Made by a program: the position numbers and the translations under genes
Notes under the pieces: model-generated
Database searches by the model: none
Told to the model about the DNA's origin: nothing
What the model saw: the letters and a program-made list of their open reading frames with translations, nothing else
Virus record (IMG/VR): IMGVR_UViG_3300036766_000988
Location: 1 to 64,000 of that record
DNA: 64,000 nt
Reading direction: 5' to 3' (one strand)
In this document: one piece after another, positions 20,109 to 42,181 of the stretch
How the letters are laid out: the number at the start of each line of letters is the position of its first letter
Position numbering within the stretch: position 1 is the stretch's first letter

Positions 20109-20879
20109 CTAAAGTCCAGCCCAAGAATCAAAACCCGTCCCCTTGCTTCTTCCCTTGAGAGTAGTGCTGATCTTAGCCCTAGTCTCAGCACTGACCTGGT
20201 GCCCTTTTTTCGCAGCACTGATCTTGGCTTTGGTCTCAGCACTGTGTCCTCTAGGTCGTTCCACACTACCGGGAAGCCGCCATCCTTTGTGAGATGCCTG
20301 TCTACCTTTAGCAACCCCACACATCTTTGGTGCAGACAGCTCGCGTGAAGCACAGAAAACCCGCATGTTCGTGAACGTGATCTCCTGTCCAGAAGGATCA
20401 ACGAAGCAGTAGGTCTTCCCTGGGTTGATGCAGGCTACTGGCATCTTCCGACCCTGCATTGTCTCCGCTCGTTTTTTACGAGCTTCAGGAGATGTCCGCA
20501 AACCCGTATGGACTCTGGACATGAGCGCCCGAGTTTGGGCACTGTGCCGATACCCACCCCTCTTTCTCCCTTCTGAAATGAGGCGTTTCATCTCAGGGGA
20601 TGCCGCCCCGTACCCATCCCCAGCGAACAAGTTGTACCCGTTGGGAGCAAAGGTGTTCAGAGTGGTCGCCCAGAACTTTTCCTTCTCATTCAGATCGGTC
20701 TGGCTGGTGCATTCACACAAAACCTCGGCCGAGAAGTTCTCTTTACCGTACTTCTGCATCGCTGCTGAAATCGGCATGTGCTTGCCGGAACTGGGCCAGC
20801 CATGACGATACAGACGGTACTTCAACGACTTCGTCGTTTGCCCTACGTACCGCTTACCGTTCAGCAGATTCGTCAGGCG
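20109..20879 (-). pseudogene. GIY-YIG homing endonuclease with NUMOD3 repeats, 5'-truncated
   Basis: RLTNLLNGKRYVGQT...PNGYNL and HSAETKAKIS repeats are present, but the GIY strand and a credible start are missing. Confidence 0.7.
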
Positions 20880-21144
20880 TTTTCTCGGAGCAAAGCCTGC
20901 TGAACCTGTAGGCAAATTCGAGCTACCTCCCGATCACCTGTTCGGGATGGAAGTGCCGAAAAACGGATCGGCCTGCTCCAAGTGCAAGTTCCTCCAGAAG
21001 CGTTCCGAGGGGGAGACGGTCGATCACTGCACGTCGGACTACTTCAAGAACTGGCGAAAGAGCCTCGGGAAAACCGACCCAACCCTCATCCCAGCCCCCG
21101 CCGACCAGTACTGCTGCGACGTCTTCGCCCAGACGTCTGGCTAG
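20872..21144 (+). CDS. Cys-rich small protein, apparently 5'-truncated (VRRFL tag)
   Basis: Frame is open upstream of ATG 20947 (VRRFLGAKPAEPVGKFELPPDHLFGMEVPKNGSACSKC) with no start codon back to the stop at 20803-20805. Confidence 0.55.
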   Translation, partial: VRRFLGAKPAEPVGKFELPPDHLFGMEVPKNGSACSKCKFLQKRSEGETVDHCTSDYFKNWRKSLGKTDPTLIPAPADQYCCDVFAQTSG

Positions 21145-21173
21145 GGCACTTATCGCAGGTTCTTCGTAGAACC

Positions 21174-21509
21174 ATGCGACTGACAATCCTCGTCCTCTTC
21201 GCCCTCACGCTCCTCATCGGATGTCCGCAGCAGGCGACCTCGCCGACGTTTGTGCAGGTCCCCGATACGGAAGTCTGCCCCACCATGTGCGCGCACTTCC
21301 GCGAACTGAAGTGCCCCGAGGGGGATGACTACTACGACAACGACAAGCCCGGCCCCAAGGGCGTGCCGAACGCCAAGTGCGAAGAGTTCTGCCAGCGGCA
21401 GCAGACCAACGGGGTCTATGAGAACCCCAGGTGCCTCTCGAAAGTCCCGTCCTGTGCCCTCATCGAAGATTGGCGCAAGAAGGACTGTTCGGTGGATGGG
21501 GGCCCCTGA
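21174..21509 (+). CDS. Cys-rich lipoprotein
   Basis: MRLTILVLFALTLLIG-C lipobox followed by multiple further Cys. Confidence 0.7.
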   Translation: MRLTILVLFALTLLIGCPQQATSPTFVQVPDTEVCPTMCAHFRELKCPEGDDYYDNDKPGPKGVPNAKCEEFCQRQQTNGVYENPRCLSKVPSCALIEDWRKKDCSVDGGP

Positions 21510-21934
21510 TGCCTGTCTGTGCCGAGAACGTCGTCCGACGATTCCTCGCGAAGCAGGTGACGTACGTAGGGGTTTTGCTCAACCGAGCAAGCCAACAAAA
21601 ACTCATTCACTGGTGGAACAAGTACGTGAAGATCCCGCTACACCCAGAGATCTTCGCCCATCACATGACCATCAAGTTCATGCCCACCCCAGAAGAAGTC
21701 CAAGCGTTTCCCATTGGGGAGCGAAGAAACCTCAAGGTCATCGGATGGGCGGCTGACGACAAGGGTCAGGCGGTCTTGGTTGTCCCTCAAGGGATCGAGA
21801 GCGACTACACACGTCCCCACATCACGATGGCCTGCGCCCCAGGGACAGGAGCCGTCTACTCGAACGAGCTGCTCGCCCAGGGGGTACATCGTGTGAACGG
21901 CCCCATGCTCACCGGCACCATCGACACCCGCTAG
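21509..21934 (+). CDS. 2H phosphoesterase (tRNA-ligase cyclic phosphodiesterase-like)
   Basis: Two HxT motifs (HHMTIKF, PHITMA) and C-terminal YSNELL; TGATG-coupled start. Confidence 0.8.
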   Translation: MPVCAENVVRRFLAKQVTYVGVLLNRASQQKLIHWWNKYVKIPLHPEIFAHHMTIKFMPTPEEVQAFPIGERRNLKVIGWAADDKGQAVLVVPQGIESDYTRPHITMACAPGTGAVYSNELLAQGVHRVNGPMLTGTIDTR

Positions 21935-21947
21935 GTCTAGGAACGCC

Positions 21948-25127: not shown

Positions 25128-25136
25128 CGATTTCCT

Positions 25137-25163
25137 GCTGATCAGGGGAGCTTTTCGGCGTAG
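25137..25163 (+). promoter_or_regulatory. Class A promoter GCTGATC-N15-CGTAG
   Basis: Matches three other copies; ATG 7 nt downstream. Confidence 0.6.
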
Positions 25164-25170
25164 TAGAGGC

Positions 25171-25326
25171 ATGGCTACTCAAGTCCTCCGCGTCGAAAAG
25201 CCCACCCCCCGCAGCGGCCTTACCTGGGCCATGCGGAAGCGCCACGGCGTCACGATCCGTCCGATGAAGGACCGCCGTCTCAAGCGGCAGAACCGCCGGT
25301 CTTGGACCCGCGAGGAACAGGCCTAG
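25171..25326 (+). CDS. Small basic hypothetical protein (51 aa)
   Basis: MATQVLRVEKPTPRSG...; below the ORF-track cutoff; directly follows the promoter motif. Confidence 0.5.
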   Translation: MATQVLRVEKPTPRSGLTWAMRKRHGVTIRPMKDRRLKRQNRRSWTREEQA

Positions 25327-25328
25327 CT

Positions 25329-25831: not shown

Positions 25832-25833
25832 AA

Positions 25834-25860
25834 GCTGAACCCCCGCCCTTGGAGGCGTAG
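25834..25860 (+). promoter_or_regulatory. Class A promoter GCTGAAC-N15-CGTAG
   Basis: Exact consensus; ATG 25868 is 7 nt downstream. Confidence 0.7.
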
Positions 25861-25867
25861 TACCCGC

Positions 25868-26391: not shown

Positions 26392-26399
26392 ATCTTGGG

Positions 26400-26670: not shown

Positions 26671-26678
26671 CAGCTTTC

Positions 26679-27461
26679 ATGGAACGTGTGATCTTCATCG
26701 GAGACGTCCACGGATGTCTGGCAGAGCTGGTCGAGTTACTTGACCGCCTCAACCCCGCACCGGAGGACAGTCTCATCTTCCTCGGAGACCTGATCGACCG
26801 CGGCCCCGATCCCGTGGGTGTCGTGCGGTTCGTCCGCAACCTGAGACAGACCCTCAACATGAATACACCCGGCACGACCCTGCTGGGCAACCACGAAGAA
26901 AAGGCTCTTCGGTGGCACCGGCACGAGAATCGTCGAGCCGCCGACCCCAAGTACAAGAACCCGATGAAGAGGGTTCCTGAAGCTCGGCTGGCCGAGTGGC
27001 GTGGGCTCAATGCAGACGATCTGGAGTTCCTCGGGAGCTGTCCGCCTTACCTCGATCCTCTGCCGGACTGGTACGCCGTCCACGGAGGCTTCGTGCCTGG
27101 GAAGCAGCCCGGCCTCCAGAAGGTCGGAGAGATGATCCGGTGCCGCTGGGTCGACACCGAGGGACACCATGTCGGCATGATGGAGGGCAGCCTCGACATG
27201 CCTCCGGGGGCACGCCCCTGGATGGAGGCCTTCGACGGACCGTTCAACGTGGTCTGTGGCCACGCGGTTCATTCGCTCGTCGATCCTCGCATCGACCAAA
27301 CGACTTCGGGTTTCGAGGTTTGGTCGATCGATACGGGCTGTGTCTTCGGAGGACGTCTGACCGCTCTGGTGCTGGACCCCACACACCCCGACCGACGCGA
27401 GGTCGTTCAGGTTCAAGCCCGTCAGAAGTACGCCGAGCTTCGAGGGGGCGGCGTCGAATGA
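26679..27461 (+). CDS. Calcineurin-like metallophosphoesterase (PrpA/ApaH/Pnkp-phosphatase family)
   Basis: GDVHG, GDLIDRGP, GNHE, VHGG, GH and IDTGCVFGGRLTA motifs. Confidence 0.92.
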   Translation: MERVIFIGDVHGCLAELVELLDRLNPAPEDSLIFLGDLIDRGPDPVGVVRFVRNLRQTLNMNTPGTTLLGNHEEKALRWHRHENRRAADPKYKNPMKRVPEARLAEWRGLNADDLEFLGSCPPYLDPLPDWYAVHGGFVPGKQPGLQKVGEMIRCRWVDTEGHHVGMMEGSLDMPPGARPWMEAFDGPFNVVCGHAVHSLVDPRIDQTTSGFEVWSIDTGCVFGGRLTALVLDPTHPDRREVVQVQARQKYAELRGGGVE

Positions 27462-27462
27462 C

Positions 27463-27733: not shown

Positions 27734-28315
27734 ATGACCATGAAAACCCAGATCAAACTCGCCGTCTCCGACATCGTGTCCGCGTTCGAGCCCGCTGCGG
27801 TTGGCTCTCGCGTGACCGACAGCCCGTCGTTCTACCGCGTCGCCGAAGAGGCCATCGCGAAGTACGACTTCACCCAGGGAAAGGTGCCCGGTCAGGGCTA
27901 TGTGCTCTGCCCCGAGGCCGTTCCCTTCGTCTCGGCTGGCGTGGGGCTCAAGTCTTCGAACCCCGATCACTACGTCTGCCGGGAGCACCGAGGAGTCGTA
28001 TCGGCCTACCTCAAGCGGGAATTCGCCGCCAAGGTTACCGGCTGCGCGCTCGTGGTCTACACGCGGAAGGCCTACTTTCAGGATCCCGACGTGACCCCGG
28101 CCGAAGCTGCACGGATCGACTCCCAAGACCCCACCCATGTCCTGGTGGCCGTCTTGGCGTCCGCGGGCCCCGAGAGCCCGCTCTCGCCCTACCGGCTCGT
28201 CTGGAACCTCGCTGGGGGCAACAAGGAAGCCCTCGTTTGGACTGCGGACGAAATCCGCGCCAAGGCCAAGACCGTCATCGACTACAACGGATCTTGGAGT
28301 GCCGTCGCTGACTGA
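27734..28315 (+). CDS. Conserved hypothetical protein (possibly DUF3228-like)
   Basis: ALVVYTRKAY...VAVLASAGPESPLSPYRLVWNLAGG pattern recalled from the family. Confidence 0.5.
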   Translation: MTMKTQIKLAVSDIVSAFEPAAVGSRVTDSPSFYRVAEEAIAKYDFTQGKVPGQGYVLCPEAVPFVSAGVGLKSSNPDHYVCREHRGVVSAYLKREFAAKVTGCALVVYTRKAYFQDPDVTPAEAARIDSQDPTHVLVAVLASAGPESPLSPYRLVWNLAGGNKEALVWTADEIRAKAKTVIDYNGSWSAVAD

Positions 28316-28794
28316 GGCTGGAGACGGCTCAACAACTTGTCGAACATGGGGTTCGTGAGCGCTCCTCGACGAGCATGTTGTACGAGCCGCACAGCATGCT
28401 CGCCTGAACACCCAAGATGCAAGTAGAGCGCAAGGGCTGACACGAGCCCGCTTCGATTGCGTCCTTGCCAACAGGTAACGAGCGTCTTGCGCCCAGCTTT
28501 GAGGTTTGCAGCCACTTCACGCGCTGCCCTCAAAGCCAAGGCGAGGTCTTCTCGTTCGGGTAAGAAACTCCCGTTGTCATCGTTGGGAGCGTAGATGACC
28601 TGAACACCAGGGTACGGATTCGGCTCTCGAAGCCCAATCAACATCTCCATTCCATCGGGGAAAACACGCGGAGGCTGAAACTCACGTGCGCAAAGCACGA
28701 GCGTGTGAAACCCCGCGTTCGTCAGAGCGTGTCCTGGTGGAGGCCAGCCGCCTTGATAAAGCCCGGGATGGATAAGAGTCGCGTCGAAGGTCAA
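28282..28794 (-). CDS. Dual-specificity/tyrosine phosphatase
   Basis: CX5R motif LVTCWQGRNRSG; GLYQG; LTNPMF. Confidence 0.88.
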   Translation of the reverse strand: MTFDATLIHPGLYQGGWPPPGHALTNAGFHTLVLCAREFQPPRVFPDGMEMLIGLREPNPYPGVQVIYAPNDDNGSFLPEREDLALALRAAREVAANLKAGRKTLVTCWQGRNRSGLVSALALYLHLGCSGEHAVRLVQHARRGALTNPMFDKLLSRLQPQSATALQDPL

Positions 28795-32389: not shown

Positions 32390-33025
32390 TTACAGGGCCT
32401 CGCGGGCTCCTCGAAACCTAGAGGCTTCCAGAGGCTCGCGTTCGTACGCTCGCCGGAGGCCTTCACGCAGCTCGATCGTGTCCGTCCCGTCGTAGCGGAT
32501 GATGTTCGGATGCGCCTTGGAACCTCCGCTTGCGAAGTCCGCGTTCCACGGATGCGCGAGACAGATGACGAGACCACGCGGCCTCACCTTGAGCCACGTG
32601 AGGAAGTAGGGCGGAAAGTCGTCGAACAAGACCCGACCGTAAACGAGCGACTTCTGGCCGGTCACCGTGACGGTCGCGTCCGGGAGATGCTCGCAACACC
32701 ATTCGAGCTTCTCTCCCCAAGCGGGCCCGTTCTTCTGAGGTCCCTTGGTGAGCACATGAAGCCCGAATCCGAGCTGGCGAAGCTCCTCAACGACCTGGAA
32801 ACCCAACGGAAGGGGCTTGAGGTTGCGCCAAAAGCCGGGCTGGCGCTGAATCATCTTGCGGCGAGCCTCGACATGCGGGGGTTCACTGCCCGTCGAGTAC
32901 CGGTCCCCGTAGAGGGGCTCGTCAGGGCTTTGGAGCGACCGCATCTGGTTCCGCATCTCCGTGTCGTAGTCCGCCACGGTACCGTCGAGGTCGATGAGCG
33001 CTACCCGATCCTGTTCGTCTTCCAT
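32390..33025 (-). CDS. HAD 5'(3')-deoxyribonucleotidase (NT5C-like)
   Basis: DLDGTVADY, PGFWRNL, K..W, LFDDFP, HPWN. Confidence 0.88.
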   Translation of the reverse strand: MEDEQDRVALIDLDGTVADYDTEMRNQMRSLQSPDEPLYGDRYSTGSEPPHVEARRKMIQRQPGFWRNLKPLPLGFQVVEELRQLGFGLHVLTKGPQKNGPAWGEKLEWCCEHLPDATVTVTGQKSLVYGRVLFDDFPPYFLTWLKVRPRGLVICLAHPWNADFASGGSKAHPNIIRYDGTDTIELREGLRRAYEREPLEASRFRGAREAL

Positions 33026-33054
33026 GCTGTAAAGTACACCGAAAGTAATCCTAG

Positions 33055-33097
33055 AAACGCGAAACCCCCGCTGCCACCAAAGGCGCGAGGGTTGCGA
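33055..33097 (-). terminator. Hairpin/terminator after the ncRNA array
   Basis: CGCAACCCTCGC...GCGGGGGTTTCGCG followed by TTTC. Confidence 0.45.
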
Positions 33098-33102
33098 TGA
33101 AG

Positions 33103-33243
33103 TCGGCCGACAAGTTGTCGTCTAGACCTTGCGGGCAGCGTCCGACCTGAGAGTCATGTCTCAGCGTTCGGCGGGACAGGGTCGTTCACCCCTGGCGTCC
33201 CCGCTCCCATTTTGGCGATGTAGTCCAGACAGTATTCGGTCGA
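33103..33243 (-). ncRNA. Y-RNA-like unit 5
   Basis: 5' UCGACCGAAUACUGUCUGGACUACAU ... 3' GACAACUUGUCGGCCGA closing stem; downstream of Ro60. Confidence 0.7.
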
Positions 33244-33268
33244 GCAGGCAGCGTAAGCCGTGGAACGA

Positions 33269-33354
33269 GCACGGGCAAGGGTTGACGGTTAGGGCCATTT
33301 TAGAGGCCCGCCTTGTCTTAGTATGTAGACCCAATCGGCATCTGACCCCCGCAC
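33269..33354 (-). ncRNA. Y-RNA-like unit 4
   Basis: 5' GUGCGGGGGUCAGAUGCCGAUUGGGUCUACAU ... CCGUCAACCCUUGCCCGUGC. Confidence 0.6.
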
Positions 33355-33365
33355 CTAGATGCGGA

Positions 33366-33496
33366 AACCAGCAAAAGTTGACGGAGTCCGTTGGCGCCAC
33401 GTAGGACGCCTTGTGAGATTCAGGTCTTCTTCATGTATGGGAGTTCCCTTGGAAGATCGATTTTTAGATGTAGACCCTGCGGGCATTCCCCCGGTT
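33366..33496 (-). ncRNA. Y-RNA-like unit 3
   Basis: 5' AACCGGGGGAAUGCCCGCAGGGUCUACAU ... CCGUCAACUUUUGCUGGUU. Confidence 0.6.
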
Positions 33497-33520
33497 GCTT
33501 TCGGGAGACAAAAGGTGCCG

Positions 33521-33576
33521 AGTCAAAAAGTGACGTCTACTTCACCAGTGAGATAGTGCCACTCCGTTGTCCGACT
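33521..33576 (-). ncRNA. Y-RNA-like unit 2 (divergent)
   Basis: AGUCGGA...UUUGACU stem; GCACUAUCU in place of GGUCUACAU. Confidence 0.35.
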
Positions 33577-33604
33577 TAGAGTGTTGGATGGCTCGTGGAA
33601 GACA

Positions 33605-33632
33605 AGACTAAAGCAACTCGTAACCGTGTCAA
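33605..33632 (-). promoter_or_regulatory. Sigma70-like promoter inside the ncRNA array
   Basis: TTGACA-N16-TAGTCT. Confidence 0.5.
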
Positions 33633-33644
33633 GGAAAGAAAATC

Positions 33645-33707
33645 GGGGCAACAAGAAATGCTGAGTCGTTGTCGAAGGGTGATGTAGACCCAGACTGCAT
33701 TCGCCCC
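33645..33707 (-). ncRNA. Y-RNA-like unit 1
   Basis: 5' GGGGCGAAUGCAGUCUGGGUCUACAU ... GCAUUUCUUGUUGCCCC; contains the GNCGAANG bacterial Y-RNA motif. Confidence 0.7.
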
Positions 33708-33724
33708 AAACTTGTAGACGCGCA

Positions 33725-33750
33725 GGGGGTCTGCCATCTGACAGACCCCC
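33725..33750 (-). terminator. Strong hairpin after the TROVE gene
   Basis: Plus-strand GGGGGTCTG-ccatctga-CAGACCCCC inverted repeat; no U-tract. Confidence 0.5.
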
Positions 33751-33758
33751 CACACGGT

Positions 33759-35504
33759 TCACGTCATCGACTCGATGACCTCCACCCAGCTTGAAGCCGA
33801 GCCCGAGTGGAAGGACTTCACGACCTCGAACACCTGATCGGAGAAGCCGCCGACATTCAGGATGTCGTTCCTCGAAGGAGCGGGCGACGTGGTGTTCGGC
33901 TGTACGTCGTTGCACACGAGCCGTGCATCCGAACGGCCCTTCTTGATGAGGTCCCACTGACGGAGGGTCTCGGTCCTCGACCCACCCCAGTTACCGTACC
34001 TCGGCGAATCCATCCACGACTCGTTGTCCGAGACGTACATGGCGAGCGCCGGGCGGATACCCATGGTGGTGATGGCCGCGAGTGCCGCCGAGCAGTTGGT
34101 GCCGCCACATGGCAGCGCCGTGAGCTTCTGCGCGTTCGTCATGATCGAATCACGCGGGTTGAGACGAACGTCCGTGAGGGCCTTCGACTCGAACGGGATG
34201 ATGACCGCGTGCGGGTTCACCCGCAGCATCGAAGCCGCGATGACGGCTGCAACGTCGATGCAACGAACCTTCGACGTGTGCTGCTCGACCCGGCCGGTCT
34301 TCGGGTTCATCTGCATGCCCGTGATGGGCGAGTGCATGGAGCCCGAGATGTCCGGCATGATGACCACGACGTCATCGACGGTCGGAACGTTCTTGGTCGC
34401 GATCTCCATCGCGTCCTGGAGAGCATTCGTGATCTCGCGCGGCATCTCCGCGTTCATGTTGAGGTAGGCGACCAAGAGCTGGTACGGGAGAGCCCGTGCC
34501 TTCGAGATCGACTGCGCATCGGCAAGCTTGGCCGCAACCGCCTTCACGACGTCGGCGCTCTTGAACGCCCCCTTCTTGTTGAAGAGGTTGAGCCGCTGAC
34601 GAAGCGACTGCCACGACTGGCGCAGAGCCAGCTCCTGCCACTGCTCGACGCTGAGCGGCAGACCTTCGAGCATCTCGAAAGGCACCTTCGGGGTCTCCCC
34701 CTGCGGCTCCTTCTTGAAGCGCTCGTAATCCGCCACGACCGACGGAATTGCATCGGACACTACGAAATCGTTGCCCTCGAACTTCCCGGCGGTCTTGTCG
34801 AGCAGATAGCCGAAGAGAGCCGCGCGTTCGCGGGTCATCGGGTGCGGGTGAACGAGCGACACGATGTCCCCAAGGGACGGATCGTTGCCGATCGACTGGA
34901 AAAACACCTGCTCGTCGGTCTTGGTGTCGAACCAGCTACGAATGAGCCGACGCGGCGCCGTACCCAGGGACTTACGGCCCGCTTCGCCCGAGCGGACGAT
35001 CTGGACGAAGTTCTTGAGCATCTTGCCGTTGTCGATCACACGCGGGAACACGGCCCACACGATCTCGTTGAGACGCTCGACCTCCTCATGAGCCGCAGCG
35101 ATCTGGGCTTCGAGCGACACCGGGACGTCACGCTTCTCCGTGCGGAGAGCCGCACGCTGCTGAAGCAGAATCTCCTCGACCTTGTGTGCCTCAGCCACAC
35201 GACCCGAGAGAGTCGCGACGAGGAACGCGGGCATGTCCTTGAGGAAGCCCTTCTCACGGCTGTAGAGCGCGAGCTTCCCGATGAACTCGGGGTCGCACTG
35301 AGTCGTCAGCTCCTTCACCTTCGTGAGCTGATCCTCGGCCTTCGCGTAGAAGGTGTTGTTGAAGCAACCCGTCGCAGCGAGCTGCGCGAGGGCTTCCTTC
35401 GCCTTGAGCGAGTACGCCAACCCGCCCGCCTCGTTCTTCGTGTCCGCAGCCGGAGACTTCGCGGAAACGCCCTTCGCCCCCCTGAAAAGGCTCTTCGATG
35501 CCAT
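33759..35504 (-). CDS. rsr: Ro60/Rsr TROVE + vWA RNA-binding protein
   Basis: NEAGGLAY, LAATGCFNNTFY, ALPYQLLVAY, MIDAS DISGSM, GGTNCS, VSDNESW, VGGFSDQVF; GGAGG SD before MASKS. Confidence 0.93.
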   Translation of the reverse strand: MASKSLFRGAKGVSAKSPAADTKNEAGGLAYSLKAKEALAQLAATGCFNNTFYAKAEDQLTKVKELTTQCDPEFIGKLALYSREKGFLKDMPAFLVATLSGRVAEAHKVEEILLQQRAALRTEKRDVPVSLEAQIAAAHEEVERLNEIVWAVFPRVIDNGKMLKNFVQIVRSGEAGRKSLGTAPRRLIRSWFDTKTDEQVFFQSIGNDPSLGDIVSLVHPHPMTRERAALFGYLLDKTAGKFEGNDFVVSDAIPSVVADYERFKKEPQGETPKVPFEMLEGLPLSVEQWQELALRQSWQSLRQRLNLFNKKGAFKSADVVKAVAAKLADAQSISKARALPYQLLVAYLNMNAEMPREITNALQDAMEIATKNVPTVDDVVVIMPDISGSMHSPITGMQMNPKTGRVEQHTSKVRCIDVAAVIAASMLRVNPHAVIIPFESKALTDVRLNPRDSIMTNAQKLTALPCGGTNCSAALAAITTMGIRPALAMYVSDNESWMDSPRYGNWGGSRTETLRQWDLIKKGRSDARLVCNDVQPNTTSPAPSRNDILNVGGFSDQVFEVVKSFHSGSASSWVEVIESMT

Positions 35505-35600
35505 GGTACCCTCCTGCATGCGCCCCGGCCGAAGCCGAACCGCCAAAGTGCCCGCCTTCATGCGACCCGCTATGGGCCGCCAAACTGGCGAGCAGGGGTT

Positions 35601-36080
35601 CTATACACCAGGCTCGTTGAGACCGTCGAGATATTTTTCAACGACCCTCAAGGCCAGGGGGTCGTCCGCGTAGAGATACCGCTTCACCTTCCGGTACTTC
35701 TGGGGCGGACTTGGTACGGGGACCTTCGGCGGTTTCACATGCTTGACGGGCTTGGGCTTCTTGGGCGGCAAGACATGCTTCGGGGGGATCGGGGGATGAA
35801 GAGGAGCGGGCGGCGGTTCGCGAACGATCTCTGGTTTGTGAGGCTTTTTGGGCTTCCGCGGAAGATGAGGCTGCCCCGGATGACGATGCGGAGCTGGCTT
35901 TCCCTCCGTGTTGAGCTTCGAGGGCGGGATTTTCTGGTAAACCCCAGCCTCCTCCTGCAACGTCTCGGGAAGAACGTAGACGATCCGCTCCTTGTCCGTG
36001 TTGTAGACAGGGATCATGTTCTTCGGTCGCGTGTACTTCCCTTCCAGGAAGCGTGCGATGACACGATGAACGAGATCCAT
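35601..36080 (-). CDS. Pro/Lys-rich protein with RVIARFL tags
   Basis: N-terminal LVHRVIARFL, C-terminal LALRVVEKYL. Confidence 0.6.
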   Translation of the reverse strand: MDLVHRVIARFLEGKYTRPKNMIPVYNTDKERIVYVLPETLQEEAGVYQKIPPSKLNTEGKPAPHRHPGQPHLPRKPKKPHKPEIVREPPPAPLHPPIPPKHVLPPKKPKPVKHVKPPKVPVPSPPQKYRKVKRYLYADDPLALRVVEKYLDGLNEPGV

Positions 36081-36103
36081 GCTCTCCAGAGTCTACCAAA
36101 AGA

Positions 36104-36856
36104 TCAGAAGTCCTCATCAGCAAGAAGCCGCGTCCAGGCATCTCGGGGATCCTTGGGCTTCTCACAAGGTCTCCAACGCGTCGAGAAGGTCACAACATTC
36201 TCATGGAGAACTTTCTCGGTTCGCCAAACGGCCACTTGCACTCGAAGCATCGTGAGTTCTGTGATGCACGCAACGACTTGGCCCCCTTCCGCTTCAGGGT
36301 GCTGCACCCACTGACCGATCTGTAGCCAATCCGGGCGCACAAACGGGGGCACCTCGGAACCGTTCGCATCCGTGCCGGAGTCGTAGATCGGCAGCGCCCC
36401 CTCGGGAAGTTGCTCGACGAGGAACGTGCGACGACCGACCGACTGGTAGTCCATCCGCTGCCGTATAGGCGCGACCATCGCCTGAGCAAGCCGCTGACGG
36501 CCTTGCTGCGACTCTAGAGCCTGCCGGATGATCTGCTCTTGTGTGATCTGAGGAAGAACGTCACGATTGAGGTTCCCTAGATCAAGCAACCCATGGGGGT
36601 TCGTGAGCCGCTCAAACCCAAGGATAGGGCGCGTCGTGAGCGGCGTTTCAACACGACCATACTGGTCGTGGATCCTACGTAGAGCAGGTGAATCCGTCTC
36701 TAGGGACTCGTTCCGCCAATGAACAATGAGGCTCGGGACCGGCCTACGTAGGACGTCAATAGACGCAACGTCGCCAGATTCCGCGAACAGCGCCCGATGG
36801 CTGTTCATCAAGATCCGACCGTCGAGGTCGTTCGGATAGAAAAGTGTCCAGGGCAC
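36104..36856 (-). CDS. Hypothetical protein with a capsid-like segment and C-terminal AWTRLLADE tag
   Basis: GRQRLAQAMVAPIRQRMDYQSVGRRTFLVEQLPEGALPIYD segment. Confidence 0.65.
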   Translation of the reverse strand: MPWTLFYPNDLDGRILMNSHRALFAESGDVASIDVLRRPVPSLIVHWRNESLETDSPALRRIHDQYGRVETPLTTRPILGFERLTNPHGLLDLGNLNRDVLPQITQEQIIRQALESQQGRQRLAQAMVAPIRQRMDYQSVGRRTFLVEQLPEGALPIYDSGTDANGSEVPPFVRPDWLQIGQWVQHPEAEGGQVVACITELTMLRVQVAVWRTEKVLHENVVTFSTRWRPCEKPKDPRDAWTRLLADEDF

Positions 36857-36907
36857 GGGAAGGCCCGAGACTACACCATCAAAAAGAAGCTAAGAAATGT
36901 TACGCAG

Positions 36908-36981
36908 TGGAGTGTCGTACGGGGATCGAACCCGTGTACCCGGATTTAGAGTTCGGTGCCTGACCTCTAGGCTAACGACAC
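36908..36981 (-). tRNA. Amber-suppressor tRNA (anticodon CUA)
   Basis: Cloverleaf: acceptor GUGUCGU/ACGACAC, D-arm GCCU-AGAGGUC-AGGC, anticodon arm CCGAA-CUCUAAA-UCCGG (one A-C mismatch), T-arm ACGGG-UUCGAUC-CCCGU, U73-CCA. Confidence 0.9.
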
Positions 36982-36985
36982 GAGA

Positions 36986-37285
36986 TTACCGACCGATTGC
37001 CACAAGAGCTTCATCCACAGCCGTGTCGGCCAGGATAAAGCTCCGCATGGCCCGAACCCACCCAGCATTCCGAGCGAACTGAATGAACGCCGAAATTTCC
37101 TCGGGCCCCACGGTGGAACAACGCCGTTCGGCAAATTCCACCGTGAGGATGTGACCAGGGCTGGTCTCATCCTCGATGAGGACTCGAAGTCGAGGTCCGA
37201 TACTAGGCTTCAAAGCCCGAACCCTGAAGCGGTACGGAACTCCGTTGACCTTGATCTGTCGGGTGCCCCTTCGAGGCATCGTCAT
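36986..37285 (-). CDS. Hypothetical protein
   Basis: MPRRGTRQIKVNGVPYRFRV...GPEEISAFIQFARNAGW; ATGA overlap. Confidence 0.65.
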   Translation of the reverse strand: MTMPRRGTRQIKVNGVPYRFRVRALKPSIGPRLRVLIEDETSPGHILTVEFAERRCSTVGPEEISAFIQFARNAGWVRAMRSFILADTAVDEALVAIGR

Positions 37286-37680
37286 GCAGCTTCAGTACAC
37301 CGAAGAGCGAGCGGAAGACTACTGACAAGACGACGAGCTGCGGGTTCAAGAGCAAACGCCGTCAACTCGTTCCCCCGGTCGGGCTCATGGAACGGCGCCA
37401 CCGAGAAGCCCCGGTCGACTGCCCTGTTGAAGAGGCCCCAAAGAGCCTCCTCGTTGGGCACGGCAAGCATGGCGAGGTAGTTCGAGCGCGTGTACCACGC
37501 CTGATCGATTTCCGGGTGATGAGCCACGAACTCCCGCAAGGCGTGCGCCGTCTGGATGGCTTGCACCCCCGGAGGGAGATCTTCCCGCGTCACGAGGAAA
37601 AGTTTGTCGGTCGGGCCCACAACAAGACTCCGTGAACCCAGATGAGCACCCATGTTCTCCATGTCACGTCGTCCCCCCAT
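37282..37680 (-). CDS. Peptidyl-tRNA hydrolase, Pth2-like
   Basis: KLFLVTREDLPPGVQAIQTAHA...L.VPNEEAL...FHEPDRGNELTAFAL...LPLAL; start uncertain. Confidence 0.8.
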   Translation of the reverse strand: MGGRRDMENMGAHLGSRSLVVGPTDKLFLVTREDLPPGVQAIQTAHALREFVAHHPEIDQAWYTRSNYLAMLAVPNEEALWGLFNRAVDRGFSVAPFHEPDRGNELTAFALEPAARRLVSSLPLALRCTEAA

Positions 37681-38260
37681 CGGAGTCCTCGTCGTACTCG
37701 TTATCGTCTTCCGCCATAACCCTGCGTTCGTCGGCGCACTTGCGGAAGTGCATTGAAACCGCCCCGATGATGGTTTCGGGAAGACCCGCCGTCTTCAGGC
37801 TCTCCTTCCAACCCACCTCGGAACGATCCCCTGCGATCCAGTGCTTTTCCCCGATGATGAACTTGGGCGGATCACTGTAGACGTTCCCGCCAGGCGTCTC
37901 CAAGTAGGGCCACAACTCCAGCGGGCTGTCATTGCAACAACCGCAGTTATGCCGAAGATCGAAGCGGTCGACTTTCGTGTTCACGGACTTCGAATAGTAG
38001 GCCACCTTGTTCCAGCGGCCCGTAAACTGCCGAAGATCCGGGTACTCCTTGAGAAGGGACTCGATCTGGTCCGCTTGGGCAAGCGCCGCTGCGGCTTCCT
38101 TGCGAAGCTTCTCGATTGCGCGTGGAACGGCAAGTCTAGCATCCTCCTCGACCTTCTTTTGCCATTCCTCAGCGGCCTTGCGACGCGACGCTTCCGCAGC
38201 CGCTTGCTGCTCGGGGGTGGGCTCGGATGTCAGGGCCTTCAGAAGCTTCTTGCTGAGCAT
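37664..38260 (-). CDS. Hypothetical protein (HNCGCC motif)
   Basis: MLSKKLLK start coupled to the upstream stop. Confidence 0.65.
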   Translation of the reverse strand: MLSKKLLKALTSEPTPEQQAAAEASRRKAAEEWQKKVEEDARLAVPRAIEKLRKEAAAALAQADQIESLLKEYPDLRQFTGRWNKVAYYSKSVNTKVDRFDLRHNCGCCNDSPLELWPYLETPGGNVYSDPPKFIIGEKHWIAGDRSEVGWKESLKTAGLPETIIGAVSMHFRKCADERRVMAEDDNEYDEDSDGGTT

Positions 38261-39459
38261 CACGAGAGCACCTGCTTCGCATATGCGAAGGCCTCGGCCA
38301 TTGCAGCCGCCGAATGCTCGAACCACTTATCCTCGACGTGCTTGCCATCCCGATAGATGACGAGCTTGATCGGGCCGGTCTCACAGGCCCATTCGAGGTC
38401 AATGGTGCTCTTGGCCTTGTAGTGGATCCGGCGGCACCACCGCTTCTCCCGACCGGTGAAGTGCGGACACCAGTTGTCGTACGTGACCCCGAGGCCCGAA
38501 TGATCTTCGGGCGACAATGCAGGATCCTTCACCAGCTCGATGTACGCCAGGTAAAGCGGATCGGTGGCCTTGAAGTCCTCCTTCCACTGCTCGTACTTGC
38601 GATTGCCTTCCTCTCGGTCGGCCCGGACCTTCTTCTCCTGCTCGGAAACCCACTCCTCGACGAGCACGAGTTTCATACCCTCGCGGCGGAAGGTCTTGGT
38701 GGCGGCATCCACCCTCGGCTTCTGCTTACAGTGATCGGGGCAGTCGTCGTGATCGCACTCCGCCCGTTCCGTCTGGTAGCACTTGATCGTCCCATCGGGC
38801 TCGATGGTGGGGTACTTGCTGTCCTCTTCGACCCCTCCCTCAGCCTCGATCTCCGGCCAACCCTCCATGGGGTTGGAGAAGTCGAAGAAACGGAACTCGT
38901 ACGGGCAGGCCCAGTGGCAGCCACAGACCACCAACATCTGGGATCCCGCATCGAACGTGGAGTCTGCCCAGCAGAAGCCGAAACCTTCCTCCGCCTCTTC
39001 GGGCAGGAAATCCCGACGCTTGCCGGTATCCAGCTCGATGACCGTCTGCCCTTGATAGTCCTCGCCGCAGACGAGGTAATCATGACCGTTCGGATGCCCT
39101 TCGACGAACGTGTACGGGAACGCAGAGTAGTTCCTGTTCACGACCGCGATGGGCGCATCCGAGCCGAGCTTGAAGACCTTCCCCTGGATGTAAGACCAGC
39201 ATCCAGGCTTCGTCTCGTAGCTCGCGATGACAAGCTTGTACTGCCCGCTCGAACTCAGCTTCTCCCAACGATCTTTCGTGCTCTCGTTCGCGGGAACGAA
39301 AACAGCGTCCTTCTCGGCCCGATAGTACGCCTTGAGCAGACCCGGCTGAACGAGGGCCTTGAGACGCTTTCGCTCCTCGTAAGCACCCGGCTCGTGGCTA
39401 TCGAAGTCGAGGTAGGCCTGCAACTCGGGGGTCATCCCCTTGAAGGTCGTGTTCATCAC
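38260..39459 (-). CDS. Hypothetical protein (~400 aa)
   Basis: GTGA overlap with the upstream gene; GCHWACPY motif. Confidence 0.7.
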   Translation of the reverse strand: MMNTTFKGMTPELQAYLDFDSHEPGAYEERKRLKALVQPGLLKAYYRAEKDAVFVPANESTKDRWEKLSSSGQYKLVIASYETKPGCWSYIQGKVFKLGSDAPIAVVNRNYSAFPYTFVEGHPNGHDYLVCGEDYQGQTVIELDTGKRRDFLPEEAEEGFGFCWADSTFDAGSQMLVVCGCHWACPYEFRFFDFSNPMEGWPEIEAEGGVEEDSKYPTIEPDGTIKCYQTERAECDHDDCPDHCKQKPRVDAATKTFRREGMKLVLVEEWVSEQEKKVRADREEGNRKYEQWKEDFKATDPLYLAYIELVKDPALSPEDHSGLGVTYDNWCPHFTGREKRWCRRIHYKAKSTIDLEWACETGPIKLVIYRDGKHVEDKWFEHSAAAMAEAFAYAKQVLS

Positions 39460-39836
39460 GCGACCTCCGTACGGACGTAGGGCTTCTTCTCCCGCACCGG
39501 AGCCGCGATAGCCCCCTCGGGGTTGGCGAGCCACTGCTCGACCTCGGGGCTCGGCTTCGTCGCCCACGAACTCTTGGCCACCTCGGCGAAGCCAGGGATG
39601 TGCGTCCCGAGGATCGTCGTGATGTACCGTGCGTTGGGCGGGTTGTGGTTGACGACCGTGCCGTCCGGCATCACCTGCTGCCGGGTCTGGCGCTCGACGC
39701 GGCGGTACGGGAAACCCCGCACGAACGCCCACGCGAGGTTGCCCTCACGGCCTCCGGTGTTGGCACGGATGGCCCGGTGGATCGCCTTCACTTGCGCCTT
39801 CTCGTCGGCGCTCATCTGCTTGTAGTTCTCGAACAT
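39456..39836 (-). CDS. Hypothetical protein, first gene under the leader attenuator
   Basis: AAGGAG SD; LAWAFVRGFPYRRVE. Confidence 0.7.
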   Translation of the reverse strand: MFENYKQMSADEKAQVKAIHRAIRANTGGREGNLAWAFVRGFPYRRVERQTRQQVMPDGTVVNHNPPNARYITTILGTHIPGFAEVAKSSWATKPSPEVEQWLANPEGAIAAPVREKKPYVRTEVA

Positions 39837-39843
39837 GATCTAT

Positions 39844-39940
39844 CTCCTTGATTTGACTCTACTGTTTCGCGGTTGGCTGAAACAGGAGTCCAAGGAGGAC
39901 CACGTGCAAGAGCGAGGTGCAGCTAGAGGAAGTGTTTCAC
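39844..39940 (-). promoter_or_regulatory. Leader peptide MKHFL(UAG)LHLALARGPP with an SD-sequestering hairpin
   Basis: GTG AAA CAC TTC CTC TAG CTG CAC CTC GCT CTT GCA CGT GGT CCT CCT; hairpin CTCCTTG-GACTC-CTGTTTC / GAAACAG-GAGTC-CAAGGAG. Confidence 0.75.
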
Positions 39941-39947
39941 GGGGAGC

Positions 39948-39976
39948 AGCATGCGCTCTCAGATCCTGGTTGTCAA
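39948..39976 (-). promoter_or_regulatory. Sigma70 promoter
   Basis: TTGACA-N17-CATGCT; leader GTG starts 7 nt downstream (leaderless). Confidence 0.7.
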
Positions 39977-40033
39977 CGGGATCGTGACGTCAGGCTCACT
40001 TCTTCTGAAAACACCGTTGAAGTCGGAGGTGCG

Positions 40034-40360
40034 TCAGTAATTTCGGTGCCGAGACGCATCTCCCATGTCGCCGGGGAACCCCATTTTGCTCGTCGTCCGC
40101 ATCACGTCCTTGACCGCTTCGGGGATCTGTTCGCTGGTCTCGACGTAGCGGGTGTAGGGCCTTCCCATCAGGTGGCCTTCGTTGCCGTCGATCTTCACGA
40201 CCGCGACCATGTAGCCGCCCTTGCCGCCCGCTTGAGGCCTGACGACGACCGTGTACTCCCACGGACGCCCATCTGTCGTGGTGCTCTTCTCAGCCCGACC
40301 GAGTTCCTTCGGGGTGAGGCGGATGGCCTTGTCAGCACGACGATCGTACGAGTACGTCAT
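40034..40360 (-). CDS. Hypothetical protein (MTYSYDRRA N-terminus)
   Basis: ORF; TCTTGT motif upstream. Confidence 0.6.
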   Translation of the reverse strand: MTYSYDRRADKAIRLTPKELGRAEKSTTTDGRPWEYTVVVRPQAGGKGGYMVAVVKIDGNEGHLMGRPYTRYVETSEQIPEAVKDVMRTTSKMGFPGDMGDASRHRNY

Positions 40361-40382
40361 ACCCCACCCTGACACAAGAAGT

Positions 40383-40928
40383 TCAGCCGCTCAGGAACCG
40401 GGCGGTGACCCGAAGCGCTGTAGTATCCTCGGGACTGCACGCGATCTGCATCGGAGTTGTGCTGACGTGATGGATCTTGAACTCAACGCTCTTCGTCTTG
40501 AGAAACGTGTCGAAAGCCCCGACATGTTCAGCACGGTCTTCCCACATCTCAACCTGCTTTGTTGTCTCTGACAAGAGAGCAGCGATCGTCTTGAGCTTGA
40601 AAGGGAGCGTGTCATCCCCGTTAGAAAAATGGGTCTCATCGAACCGGAGGCCCACCTCAGCCAACAGAGCTTGGACCCGAGTCCGCAGCTTCGGAGGCCT
40701 GCCTGTAATCATGATCGCATAGACACTAGGATTGGAAATGGACTTGCGTGCCGCTGCCACCGTAGAAGCCACCCACCACTCAGCGTCAGGCTTTTCTGGC
40801 ACGCATGGAGGCGAGAGACTCTCAAGCCGACCCCACCAGCCCTGCGTCCACCACTCAGGTTTCGCAGGCGAGCGAAAAAGCGTCCCATCGAAGTCGAAGA
40901 CATGCAGGGTCTCGATAGTCACGGGCAT
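40383..40928 (-). CDS. HAD phosphatase, Swiss-Army-Knife RNA-repair type
   Basis: LHVFDFDGTLFRSP, MITGR, FK, MWEDR..H; C-terminal ALRVTARFL. Confidence 0.8.
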   Translation of the reverse strand: MPVTIETLHVFDFDGTLFRSPAKPEWWTQGWWGRLESLSPPCVPEKPDAEWWVASTVAAARKSISNPSVYAIMITGRPPKLRTRVQALLAEVGLRFDETHFSNGDDTLPFKLKTIAALLSETTKQVEMWEDRAEHVGAFDTFLKTKSVEFKIHHVSTTPMQIACSPEDTTALRVTARFLSG

Positions 40929-42181
40929 GCACCAGGGGGTCGAGGGTCAGCTTCACCTTTCCAGTAGGTCGTAACAAGAAGCATCGAATGGCCCTTCGGA
41001 CGCACGACGATCGAGAGGCCACTCGCCGAATCCACCCACTCAAAGCTTGTGCCCCGAGCCCAGCCTTCGGTCACCCGCTGGTACATTTGGTTCTTCTGCG
41101 ACTTCCAGTCGTTGAGCGCCTTCAAGAGAGAACGAATGCCCGCTCGAACAAGCGGAACCGTGATGCCTCGTAGATCCATCCGATACTGCGCGTGTGGAGT
41201 GATGAGGATGTTGTCGATCGACCCGATCCCATGTTCTCGATCAGGGCTGTAGATCTTCGCGGCATCTGGGTTCTGTACTTTCTCACCGTGCTCGACGTCC
41301 TCAACGAGGTCATCACGAACAGCCGGATTCCGTACTTCCTTCTCGATGCGCTCGACCACATGGCAAGGTCCGCCGGGATAGCCTAGGGGAGGATCAAGAT
41401 CCGCCTGACGGTCCAACGCCGAGGTCTTGGGTGCCACCCACGCACCCAATTCGATCGTCAGAGCCACCTGGACTTTCGATGCTGGGATGTCCCCCAGATA
41501 TGCAATTGATCCAATGCGCGCAAGGCTCTTGGTGGGATCGGTTTCGCGACTATCTTCATCGGCCGCGACCTTCGAACCATCAATGCCGCGTACTTCTAGA
41601 ACCACTGCCGTTCCGTGGTGAGCTTTCGCAGCATCCAGCGCAGCGAACTTCGCCATCGAGAGCTGGGTCGTCAAATACACAGCTTCGGCTCGGCCTACGC
41701 CAGCGCCAGACCCCACCCCATAAGCAGGAACTACGTTGGTGTGGCTGCGAGGTCGTAGTCCCTCGACCAAAATACGAGAAGCCGCCGTAGAACTCGTCCC
41801 ATGATAGAAAGTCAGATGCTCCCAGTTCACCGAAGGTGTGTGGGGTTCCCCCAATAGCTGAGAGACAGGAATCCACGGCCCGTCAAACTTGATGACGAAC
41901 TCGTGTAGCTCGGGGTACTCCCGCACCATCTCACGAAGCGCCTTGTGGAACCCTGCGTGATGTTCTGTGGCACCATCAACCATGAGATTGCGCCAGTCGT
42001 TCTCACGCGCAAGGCTGAGCGCCGCATCCCAAGCCCAACCACCACGGAGGTACCCCCCAAGCTCCCAAGAACCTGCATCGTCCCCGTGGAAAGAGCCGTG
42101 ATACTTCTTGCCCTTACGTGGCAACGAGGCGGCCTGCCTGGCGAGAAACCGGGCGACGACTCGAAGGGCCAGCGCGTTCAT
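40919..42181 (-). CDS. Multidomain protein with an ADP-ribosyltransferase/Tpt1-like domain and a C-terminal HA..RM..R.I (RelE/DUF4258-like) domain
   Basis: FYHGTS...ILVEGLRP...VYLT...VVLEV; TPHAQYRMDLRGIT; N-terminal LRVVARFL. Confidence 0.6.
   Translation of the reverse strand: MNALALRVVARFLARQAASLPRKGKKYHGSFHGDDAGSWELGGYLRGGWAWDAALSLARENDWRNLMVDGATEHHAGFHKALREMVREYPELHEFVIKFDGPWIPVSQLLGEPHTPSVNWEHLTFYHGTSSTAASRILVEGLRPRSHTNVVPAYGVGSGAGVGRAEAVYLTTQLSMAKFAALDAAKAHHGTAVVLEVRGIDGSKVAADEDSRETDPTKSLARIGSIAYLGDIPASKVQVALTIELGAWVAPKTSALDRQADLDPPLGYPGGPCHVVERIEKEVRNPAVRDDLVEDVEHGEKVQNPDAAKIYSPDREHGIGSIDNILITPHAQYRMDLRGITVPLVRAGIRSLLKALNDWKSQKNQMYQRVTEGWARGTSFEWVDSASGLSIVVRPKGHSMLLVTTYWKGEADPRPPGACP

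What the first reader, a model, noticed from the sequence alone, without database searches (positions are those of the whole stretch)
20872..42181. Second shared tag (L/V)RV(V/I)ARFL on enzymes and small proteins: candidate capsid-targeting signal
Seen: VRRFL (20872), ENVVRRFLA (2H phosphoesterase N-terminus), LVHRVIARFL and LALRVVEKYL (both ends of 35601-36080), ALRVTARFL (HAD C-terminus), ALALRVVARFLARQA (ART-like N-terminus). These genes or their operons have (T/A)CTT(A/G/T)T motifs upstream, as structural gene 2520 does, rather than the GGTGTAG motif. Known: T4 internal proteins use a short capsid-targeting sequence. Inference: late-made 2H, HAD and ART enzymes are packaged and injected as immediate counter-defence.
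Basis: partly seen in the sequence, partly recalled or inferred. Interest (0 to 1): 0.65.

Follow-up and report, generated by a model that had tools for sequence, protein, structure and literature searches.

The report
Shared docking tag on phage enzymes
A huge sediment phage puts the same 12-15-residue peptide on the ends of a dozen otherwise unrelated proteins; the tag is real, but the evidence links it to the phage's own ClpX unfoldase rather than to the capsid.

Summary
The tag is real. Its consensus is M-D-(P)-L-A-L-R-V-V-A-R-F-L. A loose pattern gives 9 hits in 311 called proteins of this 252-kb phage record against 0.12 expected. Six sit at residues 6-8, two at the C-terminus and one inside a protein. 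The carriers share only the tag. In the window it sits on an ART-like protein, a HAD_SAK_1 phosphatase, a 2H-like protein and both ends of a Pro/Lys-rich 159-aa protein. The "VRRFL at 20872" instance is spurious: it lies antisense to a homing endonuclease gene.

The tag recurs in related huge phages, on metallopeptidase-like proteins, a SAM-lyase-like protein and type IB topoisomerases.

Nothing tested supports the capsid reading: no cleavage site follows the tag, and no capsid or prohead protease gene lies in the held fragments.

Two independent lines point to ClpX. These phages encode a full-length ClpX with its zinc-finger N-domain, and tagged genes cluster next to clpX (25 of 35 hits within 3 kb in 36 loci). 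The tag core ALRVV equals the core of the E. coli SspB peptide RGGRPALRVVK, which tethers SspB to the ClpX N-domain.

Tagged genes also share a TCTT(G/A/T/C)T upstream motif and lack the common GGTGTAG motif. Binding, fate and timing remain untested.

The parts
40919..42181 (-). ART-like protein (420 aa) with the N-terminal tag
   Evidence: ORF. Weak Pfam PARP hit, E 0.004, below the cut-off. Atlas structural neighbours are DarT/PARP, Tpt1/KptA and Arr families, at low TM-scores. The 240-aa homologue in another phage (L005) aligns from residue 17 and has no tag.
42134..42181 (-). Tag on the ART-like protein, residues 1-16; the core LALRVVARFL contains ALRVV
42197..42202 (-). TCTTGT upstream motif, 15 nt before the ART start codon
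40383..40928 (-). HAD phosphatase of the 'Swiss army knife' RNA-repair type (181 aa). It overlaps the ART gene by 10 nt.
   Evidence: Pfam PF10307 HAD_SAK_1, E 2.2e-14, residues 29-160.
40386..40424 (-). Tag at the C-terminus of the HAD protein, residues 169-181, two residues before the stop
35601..36080 (-). p159: 159-aa protein with a tag at each end and a Pro/Lys-rich linker. It lies between p250 and Ro60; relatives have no gene there.
   Evidence: No Pfam or PHROG family. Relatives have p250 directly followed by Ro60.
36039..36080 (-). N-terminal tag of p159, residues 1-14
35622..35666 (-). C-terminal tag of p159, residues 139-153; contains ALRVV
36098..36103 (-). TCTTTT upstream motif, 17 nt before the p159 start codon
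21509..21934 (+). 2H-like protein (141 aa from the ATG at 21509). It has two H-x-T motifs and lies 14 nt upstream of a 1059-aa fibre-like gene.
   Evidence: ORF. No Pfam hit. Weak phrog_36523 hit, E 0.003. The 2H assignment rests on the two H-x-T motifs only.
21509..21556 (+). Tag on the 2H-like protein, residues 1-16. This is the weakest window copy: N-V-V-R-R-F-L, with N where the other copies have R.

Best explanation
The tag is a modular docking peptide: a short N-capped segment on a flexible linker. Its most likely receptor is the zinc-finger N-domain of the ClpX unfoldase that this phage clade encodes. In this genome clpX lies outside the window, at 126173-127450(-).

By analogy with the SspB tail and the UmuD N-terminal arm, the tag would tether its carrier to ClpX. 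ClpX can then unfold or remodel the carrier, or hand it to ClpP. The carriers would form a set of ClpX clients or adaptors with their own upstream motif. They include the ART-like, HAD, 2H-like and SAM-lyase-like proteins, metallopeptidase-like proteins and type IB topoisomerases.

p159 has two tags on a long Pro/Lys linker and no domain. It would act as a bivalent tether or a competitor for the N-domains.

Shown: the tag exists, is modular, sits at protein ends, is co-regulated, is conserved across related phages and clusters beside clpX. Its core is identical to the SspB peptide.

Inferred: that it binds ClpX, and what happens next. The outcome could be degradation for timing, remodelling, or translocation.
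For: 1. Receptor present. The phage ClpX is full length and matches E. coli ClpX (8e91) at E 2.8e-105 over residues 8-425. It has zf-C4_ClpX at E 3e-10. The four zinc cysteines and the G-F of the ClpP-docking loop are invariant in 114 phage-clade sequences.

2. Gene neighbourhood.
- In G001, clpX is flanked on both sides by tagged HExxH proteins.
- In L025 and L027, the genes next to clpX carry the tag.
- The p263 family has an N-terminal tag in most of 55 homologues and shares contigs with ClpX homologues.
- In 36 non-redundant IMG/VR clpX loci there are 35 tag hits at 10 bits or more, against 0 in reversed-sequence controls. Twenty-five lie within 3 kb of clpX (31% expected, binomial p 1e-6) and 34 are on the clpX strand.
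- In the complete 411-kb relative G006, 3 of the 5 genome-wide hits lie within 10 kb of clpX.
- Ro60 loci of relatives carry no tag.

3. Motif. The E. coli SspB peptide that binds the ClpX N-domain is RGGRPALRVVK (PMC3983244, PMC8808172). ALRVV occurs verbatim in the ART tag and the p159 C-terminal tag, and the consensus is L-A-L-R-V-V-A-R-F-L. SspB carries its peptide at the C-terminus after a disordered region (PMC9963277). UmuD carries its ClpX recognition sequence in the N-terminal arm (PMC5342242). Both ends therefore have precedent.

4. Tether-like build. In the AF2 model of p263 (mean pLDDT 89.9), the tag forms helix 3-13. A low-confidence linker, residues 14-26, follows before the folded part.

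5. A phage whose ART homologue lacks the tag has no ClpX.
Against: - No binding evidence exists. The one complex prediction gave no verdict and does not count either way.
- The E. coli N-domain residues reported as important for recognition (L12, L13, H23; PMC8808172) align to I, A and N in the phage ClpX.
- The tag extends beyond the SspB peptide with a strongly conserved R-F-L. It is modelled as a helix; from memory, the SspB tail binds in extended form.
- In this genome most tagged genes are not next to clpX. They lie at 21-42, 80-83, 139 and 221 kb, with clpX at 126-127 kb.
- The neighbourhood statistics are not phylogenetically independent: part of the signal is the conserved order clpX-p263-p403.
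- ClpP was found in neither held fragment, and in only 1 of 5 related records, including none in a complete one. Degradation would therefore need host ClpP.
Confidence: 0.45

Rival explanations
1. Capsid-targeting sequence. The tag binds a scaffold, core or shell protein, so that the enzymes are packed into the head and injected with the DNA.
For: - A conserved short leader on otherwise unrelated, fast-changing proteins is what T4 internal proteins show. From memory, T4 Alt, an ADP-ribosyltransferase, is packaged that way.
- The carriers are enzymes that would be useful at the moment of injection: ART-like, SAM-lyase-like, metallopeptidase-like and type IB topoisomerase.
- The 2H-like gene abuts a fibre-like gene.
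- p159 lies next to p250, which holds a segment homologous to the N-terminal part of an HK97-type capsid protein.
- Iyer et al. 2021 suggest that phage ClpX or ClpA may act as translocases or aid virion assembly (PMC7824862).
Against: - No conserved cleavage motif follows the tag.
- The tag also occurs at C-termini, internally and in two copies.
- No link to capsid, portal or protease genes could be tested. No such family was found in the held fragments.
- The conserved core carriers, p263 and p403, lie beside clpX among nucleotide-metabolism genes, not in a structural module.
- Late timing is not shown.
Confidence: 0.15
2. Assembly peptide for a hub other than ClpX. The tags bind each other, or bind a conserved phage protein such as p403 or Ro60, and gather the enzymes into one complex or condensate. 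Proteins with two tags act as cross-linkers.
For: - The tag is an amphipathic segment with a wide hydrophobic face.
- p159, G001 p192 and the G001 449-aa protein each carry two tags.
- Several carriers are RNA-repair enzymes that are fused in 'Swiss army knife' proteins elsewhere.
- p159 lies directly upstream of Ro60.
Against: - Carriers reach well beyond RNA repair: SAM lyase, topoisomerase and peptidases.
- Relatives keep p250-Ro60 and the RNA-repair genes without any tag nearby.
- No candidate hub other than ClpX shows a positional link. The second AAA+ gene, about 8 kb upstream of clpX, has almost no tags near it.
Confidence: 0.15
3. Membrane-targeting amphipathic helix or generic chaperone-binding (DnaK-type) segment.
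For: It is a hydrophobic core flanked by arginines, placed at either terminus, as in MinD- or FtsA-type membrane-targeting sequences (from memory).
Against: Sequence conservation is much tighter than such signals need. R at 0 and +4, F at +5 and L at +6 are each kept in 16-18 of 19 copies, and the tag has a conserved N-cap. This speaks for a specific protein pocket.
Confidence: 0.05
4. No function: chance, shared ancestry of the carriers, or a DNA repeat that happens to be translated.
For: None found.
Against: - Nine hits against 0.12 expected.
- The carriers share nothing but the tag.
- Codons differ between copies.
- The tag is conserved in phages whose ClpX is only 51-70% identical.
Confidence: 0.01

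Closest known systems
[quoted passage not shown]
   Same: It is a short peptide at a protein end, joined by a flexible linker, and it docks to the zinc-finger N-domain of ClpX. The core ALRVV is identical. Bivalent tethering is a known feature of SspB dimers, and p159 has two tags. The phage encodes the receptor domain.
   Different: The phage tag is longer, with an invariant R-F-L after the core. It is usually N-terminal and carried by many unrelated enzymes rather than by one adaptor. It is modelled as a helix. The phage N-domain differs at positions reported as important in E. coli. Binding is untested.
Capsid targeting sequence of phage T4 internal proteins (IPI-III, Alt)
   Same: It is a conserved short leader on otherwise unrelated, variable proteins of a large phage, including an ADP-ribosyltransferase-like enzyme.
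   Different: No protease cleavage motif follows it. It also occurs at C-termini, internally and twice in one protein. There is no shown link to head genes. The conserved carriers lie beside clpX.
Cargo-loading peptides of encapsulins and encapsulation peptides of bacterial microcompartments
   Same: It is a short amphipathic terminal peptide, at either end of the protein, on a poorly conserved linker, and it addresses unrelated enzymes to one place.
   Different: No shell protein was found. p250 holds only a fragment of an HK97-type capsid protein, not a complete fold.

Membership tests
SspB-XB-type ClpX N-domain tethering motif | Sequence core L-R-V-V preceded by a small residue, at a protein end | tested here: met
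   ALRVV occurs verbatim in two window tags. The consensus over 19 copies is L-A-L-R-V-V-A-R-F-L. The XB peptide is RGGRPALRVVK (PMC3983244, PMC8808172). Six of 9 pattern hits are at residues 6-8 and two are in the last 15 residues.
SspB-XB-type ClpX N-domain tethering motif | A ClpX with an intact zinc-finger N-domain is available | tested here: met
   zf-C4_ClpX is present in the phage ClpX of G000 and G001. The four cysteines are invariant in 114 sequences.
SspB-XB-type ClpX N-domain tethering motif | Flexible linker between the motif and the folded part | tested here: met
   In the p263 model, the tag helix 3-13 is followed by low-confidence residues 14-26. The linkers in p159 and p403 are Pro/Lys-rich.
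SspB-XB-type ClpX N-domain tethering motif | Physical binding to the ClpX N-domain, competed by XB peptide | tested here: inconclusive
   The complex prediction returned 'no answer' and is no evidence either way. Biochemistry is needed.
SspB-XB-type ClpX N-domain tethering motif | Conservation of the N-domain residues that contact the SspB tail in E. coli | tested here: not met
   E. coli L12, L13 and H23 (PMC8808172) align to I8, A9 and N19 in the phage ClpX. The pocket, if used, is a variant.
T4-type capsid targeting sequence | Strictly N-terminal leader | tested here: not met
   The HAD protein and p159 have C-terminal copies, p403 has an internal copy, and the G001 449-aa protein has copies at both ends.
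T4-type capsid targeting sequence | Prohead-protease cleavage motif directly after the leader | tested here: not met
   Positions +7 to +11 after the core are variable, with no fixed Glu.
T4-type capsid targeting sequence | Carriers present in virions, processed | not testable with these tools
   This is a metagenomic phage. Only one DNA run holds it.
Encapsulin or microcompartment cargo peptide | A cognate shell protein is encoded | tested here: not met
   There is no Phage_capsid or Gp23 family hit in the 252-kb record. p250 has only about 60 residues of capsid-like sequence. The record is 53% complete.

The most novel reading that the evidence does not exclude
The tag is an export or loading signal. 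The phage ClpX recognises it through its N-domain and, without ClpP, unfolds and threads the tagged enzymes into the procapsid or another phage-made compartment. The conserved neighbours p263 and p403 would assist; p403 has a hydrophobic, glycine-rich C-terminal part.
Probability: 0.1. Interest if true: 0.9.

Novelty: new variant of a known kind. Interest (0 to 1): 0.68.

Why it matters
If the tag docks to the phage's own ClpX, this clade of huge phages carries a private addressing system. It would consist of one unfoldase, one peptide address and a changing set of enzymes that attack or repair host and phage nucleic acids and proteins.

That would explain why so many huge phages encode ClpX. 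It would also provide a simple handle, the tag, for finding new phage effectors in metagenomes, and a candidate degron and receptor pair for protein control in bacteria.

The tag already works as a search key. It picked out an ART-like protein, a SAM-lyase-like protein, metallopeptidase-like proteins and type IB topoisomerases among proteins that mostly have no annotation.

Tried and rejected
- Complex prediction: phage ClpX N-domain (residues 1-62, two copies, with zinc) against ART residues 1-40. Score 0.01, verdict 'no answer'. It is not used as evidence for or against binding.
- Pfam and PHROGs on p159, p87, p183, p122, p263 and p403 gave nothing usable.
- Foldseek of the good p263 model against the PDB found no match at E <= 0.001. 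The Atlas look-up of p263 gave nothing.
- Capsid (PF05065, PF07068), prohead protease (PF03420, PF04586) and ClpP (PF00574) families were not found in G000 or G001. Both records are fragments. For PF07068 and PF03420 the controls did not ring either, so these blanks say little.
- megablast of 33759-42181 against GenBank phages gave no match.
- The search for relatives of p263 in IMG/VR by peptide patterns found none. The word search later found 55.
- The NCBI huge-phage assemblies behind L021 and L026 could not be searched whole.
- Neher et al. 2003 (PMC263758) is not held. The UmuD motif itself is therefore cited only through PMC5342242.
- Expression could not be tested. Only one DNA run, a sediment metagenome that is probably the source, holds the locus, and there is no RNA run.
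- An Rfam search of the gap after Ro60 found nothing.
The profile was rebuilt from coordinates instead.
- Rejected readings: a DNA repeat, and shared ancestry of the carriers.


Full report
**Setting.** The window is the first 64 kb of a 252,183-bp IMG/VR virus record (G000). The record is 59% G+C and CheckV rates it 53% complete, so this is a huge phage. The only public run that holds the locus is a sediment metagenome.

The finding's region is rich in RNA-repair and nucleotide genes:

| Gene | Coordinates |
|---|---|
| Calcineurin-like phosphoesterase | 26679-27461 |
| Dual-specificity phosphatase-like | 28282-28794 |
| RlaP nucleotidyltransferase | 30344-31438 |
| NT5C | 32390-33025 |
| Ro60/TROVE | 33759-35561 |
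| PTH2 | 37282-37680 |
| HAD_SAK_1 | 40383-40928 |
| DNA ligase | 43587-44873 |

This matches the RNA-repair repertoire described for jumbo phages (PMC7824862).

**The observation.** A six-frame scan confirms the tag at four places in the window:
- the N-terminus of the ART-like protein;
- the C-terminus of the HAD protein;
- both ends of p159;
- the N-terminus of the 2H-like protein, if translation starts at the ATG at 21509.

The sixth instance, VRRFL at 20872, is not in a gene. That frame has no start codon before 20947, and the stretch is antisense to a GIY-YIG homing endonuclease gene.

A pattern drawn from the window finds further copies elsewhere in the same genome:
- N-terminal on p87, p183, p122 and p263;
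- internal in p403.

Looser variants sit on a SAM-lyase-family protein (PF23780, E 7e-7) and on p447.

In the called proteome there are 9 pattern hits against 0.12 expected. Six start at residues 6-8 and two lie in the last 15 residues. Codons differ between copies. The carriers share nothing else.

The tag lies outside the conserved part of each carrier that has relatives:
- The ART homologue in a 75-kb phage begins after it.
- The PHROG family of p447 starts at residue 20.

The consensus from 19 copies is M-D-(P/D)-L-A-L-R-V-V-A-R-F-L-A-A. R0, R+4, F+5 and L+6 are nearly invariant, and nothing is conserved after +7.

**Regulation.** Two upstream signals separate the genes.
- The common one is GGTGTA(G), about 9 nt before the ATG, often with GGCTGAAC about 13 nt further up. 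It precedes RlaP, NT5C, ligase, clpX, a helicase and many others: 37 of 208 ATG-start genes.
- No tagged gene has it. Five of nine independently started tagged genes have TCTTNT 13-17 nt before the ATG, followed by a purine-rich stretch. Only 10 of 208 genes overall have TCTTNT.

The same TCTTNT motif precedes genes that carry another N-terminal tag, M-x-x-S-Y-D-R-R. With automatically called starts the association is strong: odds ratio 32, p = 3e-5.

Its reading as 'late' has no support either way.

**Relatives.** A degenerate DNA pattern for the N-terminal tag found a second huge phage, G001 (111,677 bp, 23% complete, 45-74% protein identity on shared genes). It carries the tag on at least seven proteins, including:
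- two HExxH metallopeptidase-like paralogues, one of them tagged at both ends;
- one protein with two copies.

**The lead to ClpX.** Annotating the genes shared by G000 and G001 showed that both encode a full-length ClpX. It has zf-C4_ClpX, AAA_2 and the D2-small domain, and it matches E. coli ClpX at E 2.8e-105.

The neighbourhood evidence:
- In G001, clpX is flanked on both sides by tagged genes.
- In G000, the tagged pair p263-p403 lies 2.9 kb downstream of clpX.
- In relatives L025 and L027, the genes next to clpX start with the tag, and the p403 orthologue carries it internally or at its C-terminus.
- The p263 family has 55 members. Most have the tag at the N-terminus, followed by a conserved A-G-x-V-V-P-F-K-P stretch. 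Several lie on the same contigs as ClpX homologues.
- In 42 IMG/VR clpX loci, 36 of them non-redundant, a profile of the tag gives 35 hits at 10 bits or more, against none in reversed sequence. Twenty-five lie within 3 kb of clpX (31% expected) and 34 are on its strand.
- In a complete 411-kb relative with terminal repeats, 3 of the 5 hits in the whole genome lie within 10 kb of clpX.
- Ro60 loci of relatives have no tag and no p159.

Part of this signal is conserved gene order, so the p-values overstate independence. The gene directly after clpX belongs to different families in different phages and still starts with the tag.

**The motif.** The peptide by which E. coli SspB tethers itself to the ClpX N-domain is RGGRPALRVVK (PMC3983244, PMC8808172). 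It sits at the end of a disordered region (PMC9963277). UmuD carries its ClpX recognition sequence in its N-terminal arm (PMC5342242).

The tag core A-L-R-V-V is identical to the SspB peptide's core. In the confident AF2 model of p263, the tag is a short helix on a low-confidence linker. This is the build of a tether.

**Weak points of the ClpX reading.**
- Binding is untested. The only complex prediction gave no verdict.
- The E. coli N-domain residues reported as important are not conserved in the phage ClpX.
- The tag has an extra conserved R-F-L.
- Most tagged genes in this genome are far from clpX.
- ClpP is absent from the held fragments and from 4 of 5 related records. The ClpP-docking G-F is conserved, so degradation through host ClpP remains possible. 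Remodelling or translocation are the other options.

**The capsid reading.** It stays possible but has no positive evidence beyond analogy.
- No cleavage motif follows the tag.
- The tag is not strictly N-terminal.
- No head genes were available to test.
- p250, next to p159, contains about 60 residues homologous to the N-terminal part of an HK97-type capsid protein. It is the conserved upstream partner of Ro60 in relatives that have no tags. That speaks about Ro60, not about the tag.
- Iyer et al. raise the idea that phage ClpX could translocate proteins or aid virion assembly (PMC7824862). This combined model is given as the novel case.

**Verdict.** The capsid interpretation is unproven.

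The best-supported explanation is a ClpX-docking tag that marks a co-regulated, fast-changing set of phage enzymes, with confidence about 0.45. I found no description of it in the held literature.

Noticed in passing
window 40331-40360 (-), with TCTTGT at 40374-40379; also G000 78599(-), 91912(+), 92207(+), 118281(+), 182517(+); G001 83157, 101487, 15480: A second terminal tag, M-x-x-S-Y-D-R-R-(A/T), sits on other small proteins. It is N-terminal except for one C-terminal copy in G001. It shares the TCTT(G/A)T upstream motif with the R-F-L tag. Some p263 orthologues carry M-T-Y-x-(Y/F)-R-P-P where others carry the R-F-L tag, as if the two were interchangeable.
   Followed up: partly
window 36104-36856 (-): p250 is the conserved gene directly upstream of Ro60 in related huge phages. 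Residues about 105-165 are homologous to the N-terminal part of an HK97-type major capsid protein (phrog_2522 E 8.5e-11; P0024 with PF05065). The AF2 model shows three modules and not a capsid fold. The helix before the capsid-like segment (R-Q-x-I-I-x-x-Y-L in the family) faintly resembles the tag.
   Followed up: partly
G000 222338-222799 (+), outside the window (L004:6338-6799): A 153-aa protein contains a fragment similar to the C-terminal part of the same capsid protein (tblastn E 3e-6). It lies 1 kb from the tagged p122.
   Followed up: no
window 36908-36981 (-): A tRNA gene with anticodon CUA (an amber-reading tRNA) lies between PTH2/p99 and p250. TAG still ends 106 of 311 called genes, so the genome gives no sign of another code.
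   Followed up: partly
window 33026-33758: An ORF-free gap of about 730 nt lies downstream of Ro60, and gaps of 350-550 nt lie at the same place in relatives. This is where a Y-RNA-like partner would be expected. There is no Rfam match at E <= 1.
   Followed up: partly
whole genome, e.g. window 31454(-), 33040(-), 44899(-), 54240(-), 57544(-): The promoter-like motif GGCTGAAC-N13-GGTGTAG ends about 9 nt before the ATG of 37 of 208 ATG-start genes, with no Shine-Dalgarno stretch. It looks like a class of near-leaderless transcripts.
   Followed up: partly
L037:19351-20169, L069:20450-21184, L053:20651-21220 (other huge phages): Type IB topoisomerases (PF01028, E down to 1.4e-25) carry the tag at their N-terminus, about 10 kb from clpX.
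   Followed up: partly
G000 139167-139892 (+), outside the window (L018:5168-5893): A tagged protein of the S-adenosylmethionine lyase family (PF23780, E 7e-7; also DUF3293). It is a likely anti-restriction enzyme.
   Followed up: no
window 20109-20915 (-): A GIY-YIG homing endonuclease gene (phrog_314, E 1.4e-36) with codon usage unlike the rest of the genome. My coding-potential caller missed it.
   Followed up: no
G000 131745-133328 (-), outside the window (L023:3746-5329): A second, highly expressed-looking AAA+ ATPase (PF00004; GC3 0.87) is conserved about 8 kb from clpX in the whole clade. Tags do not cluster near it.
   Followed up: no
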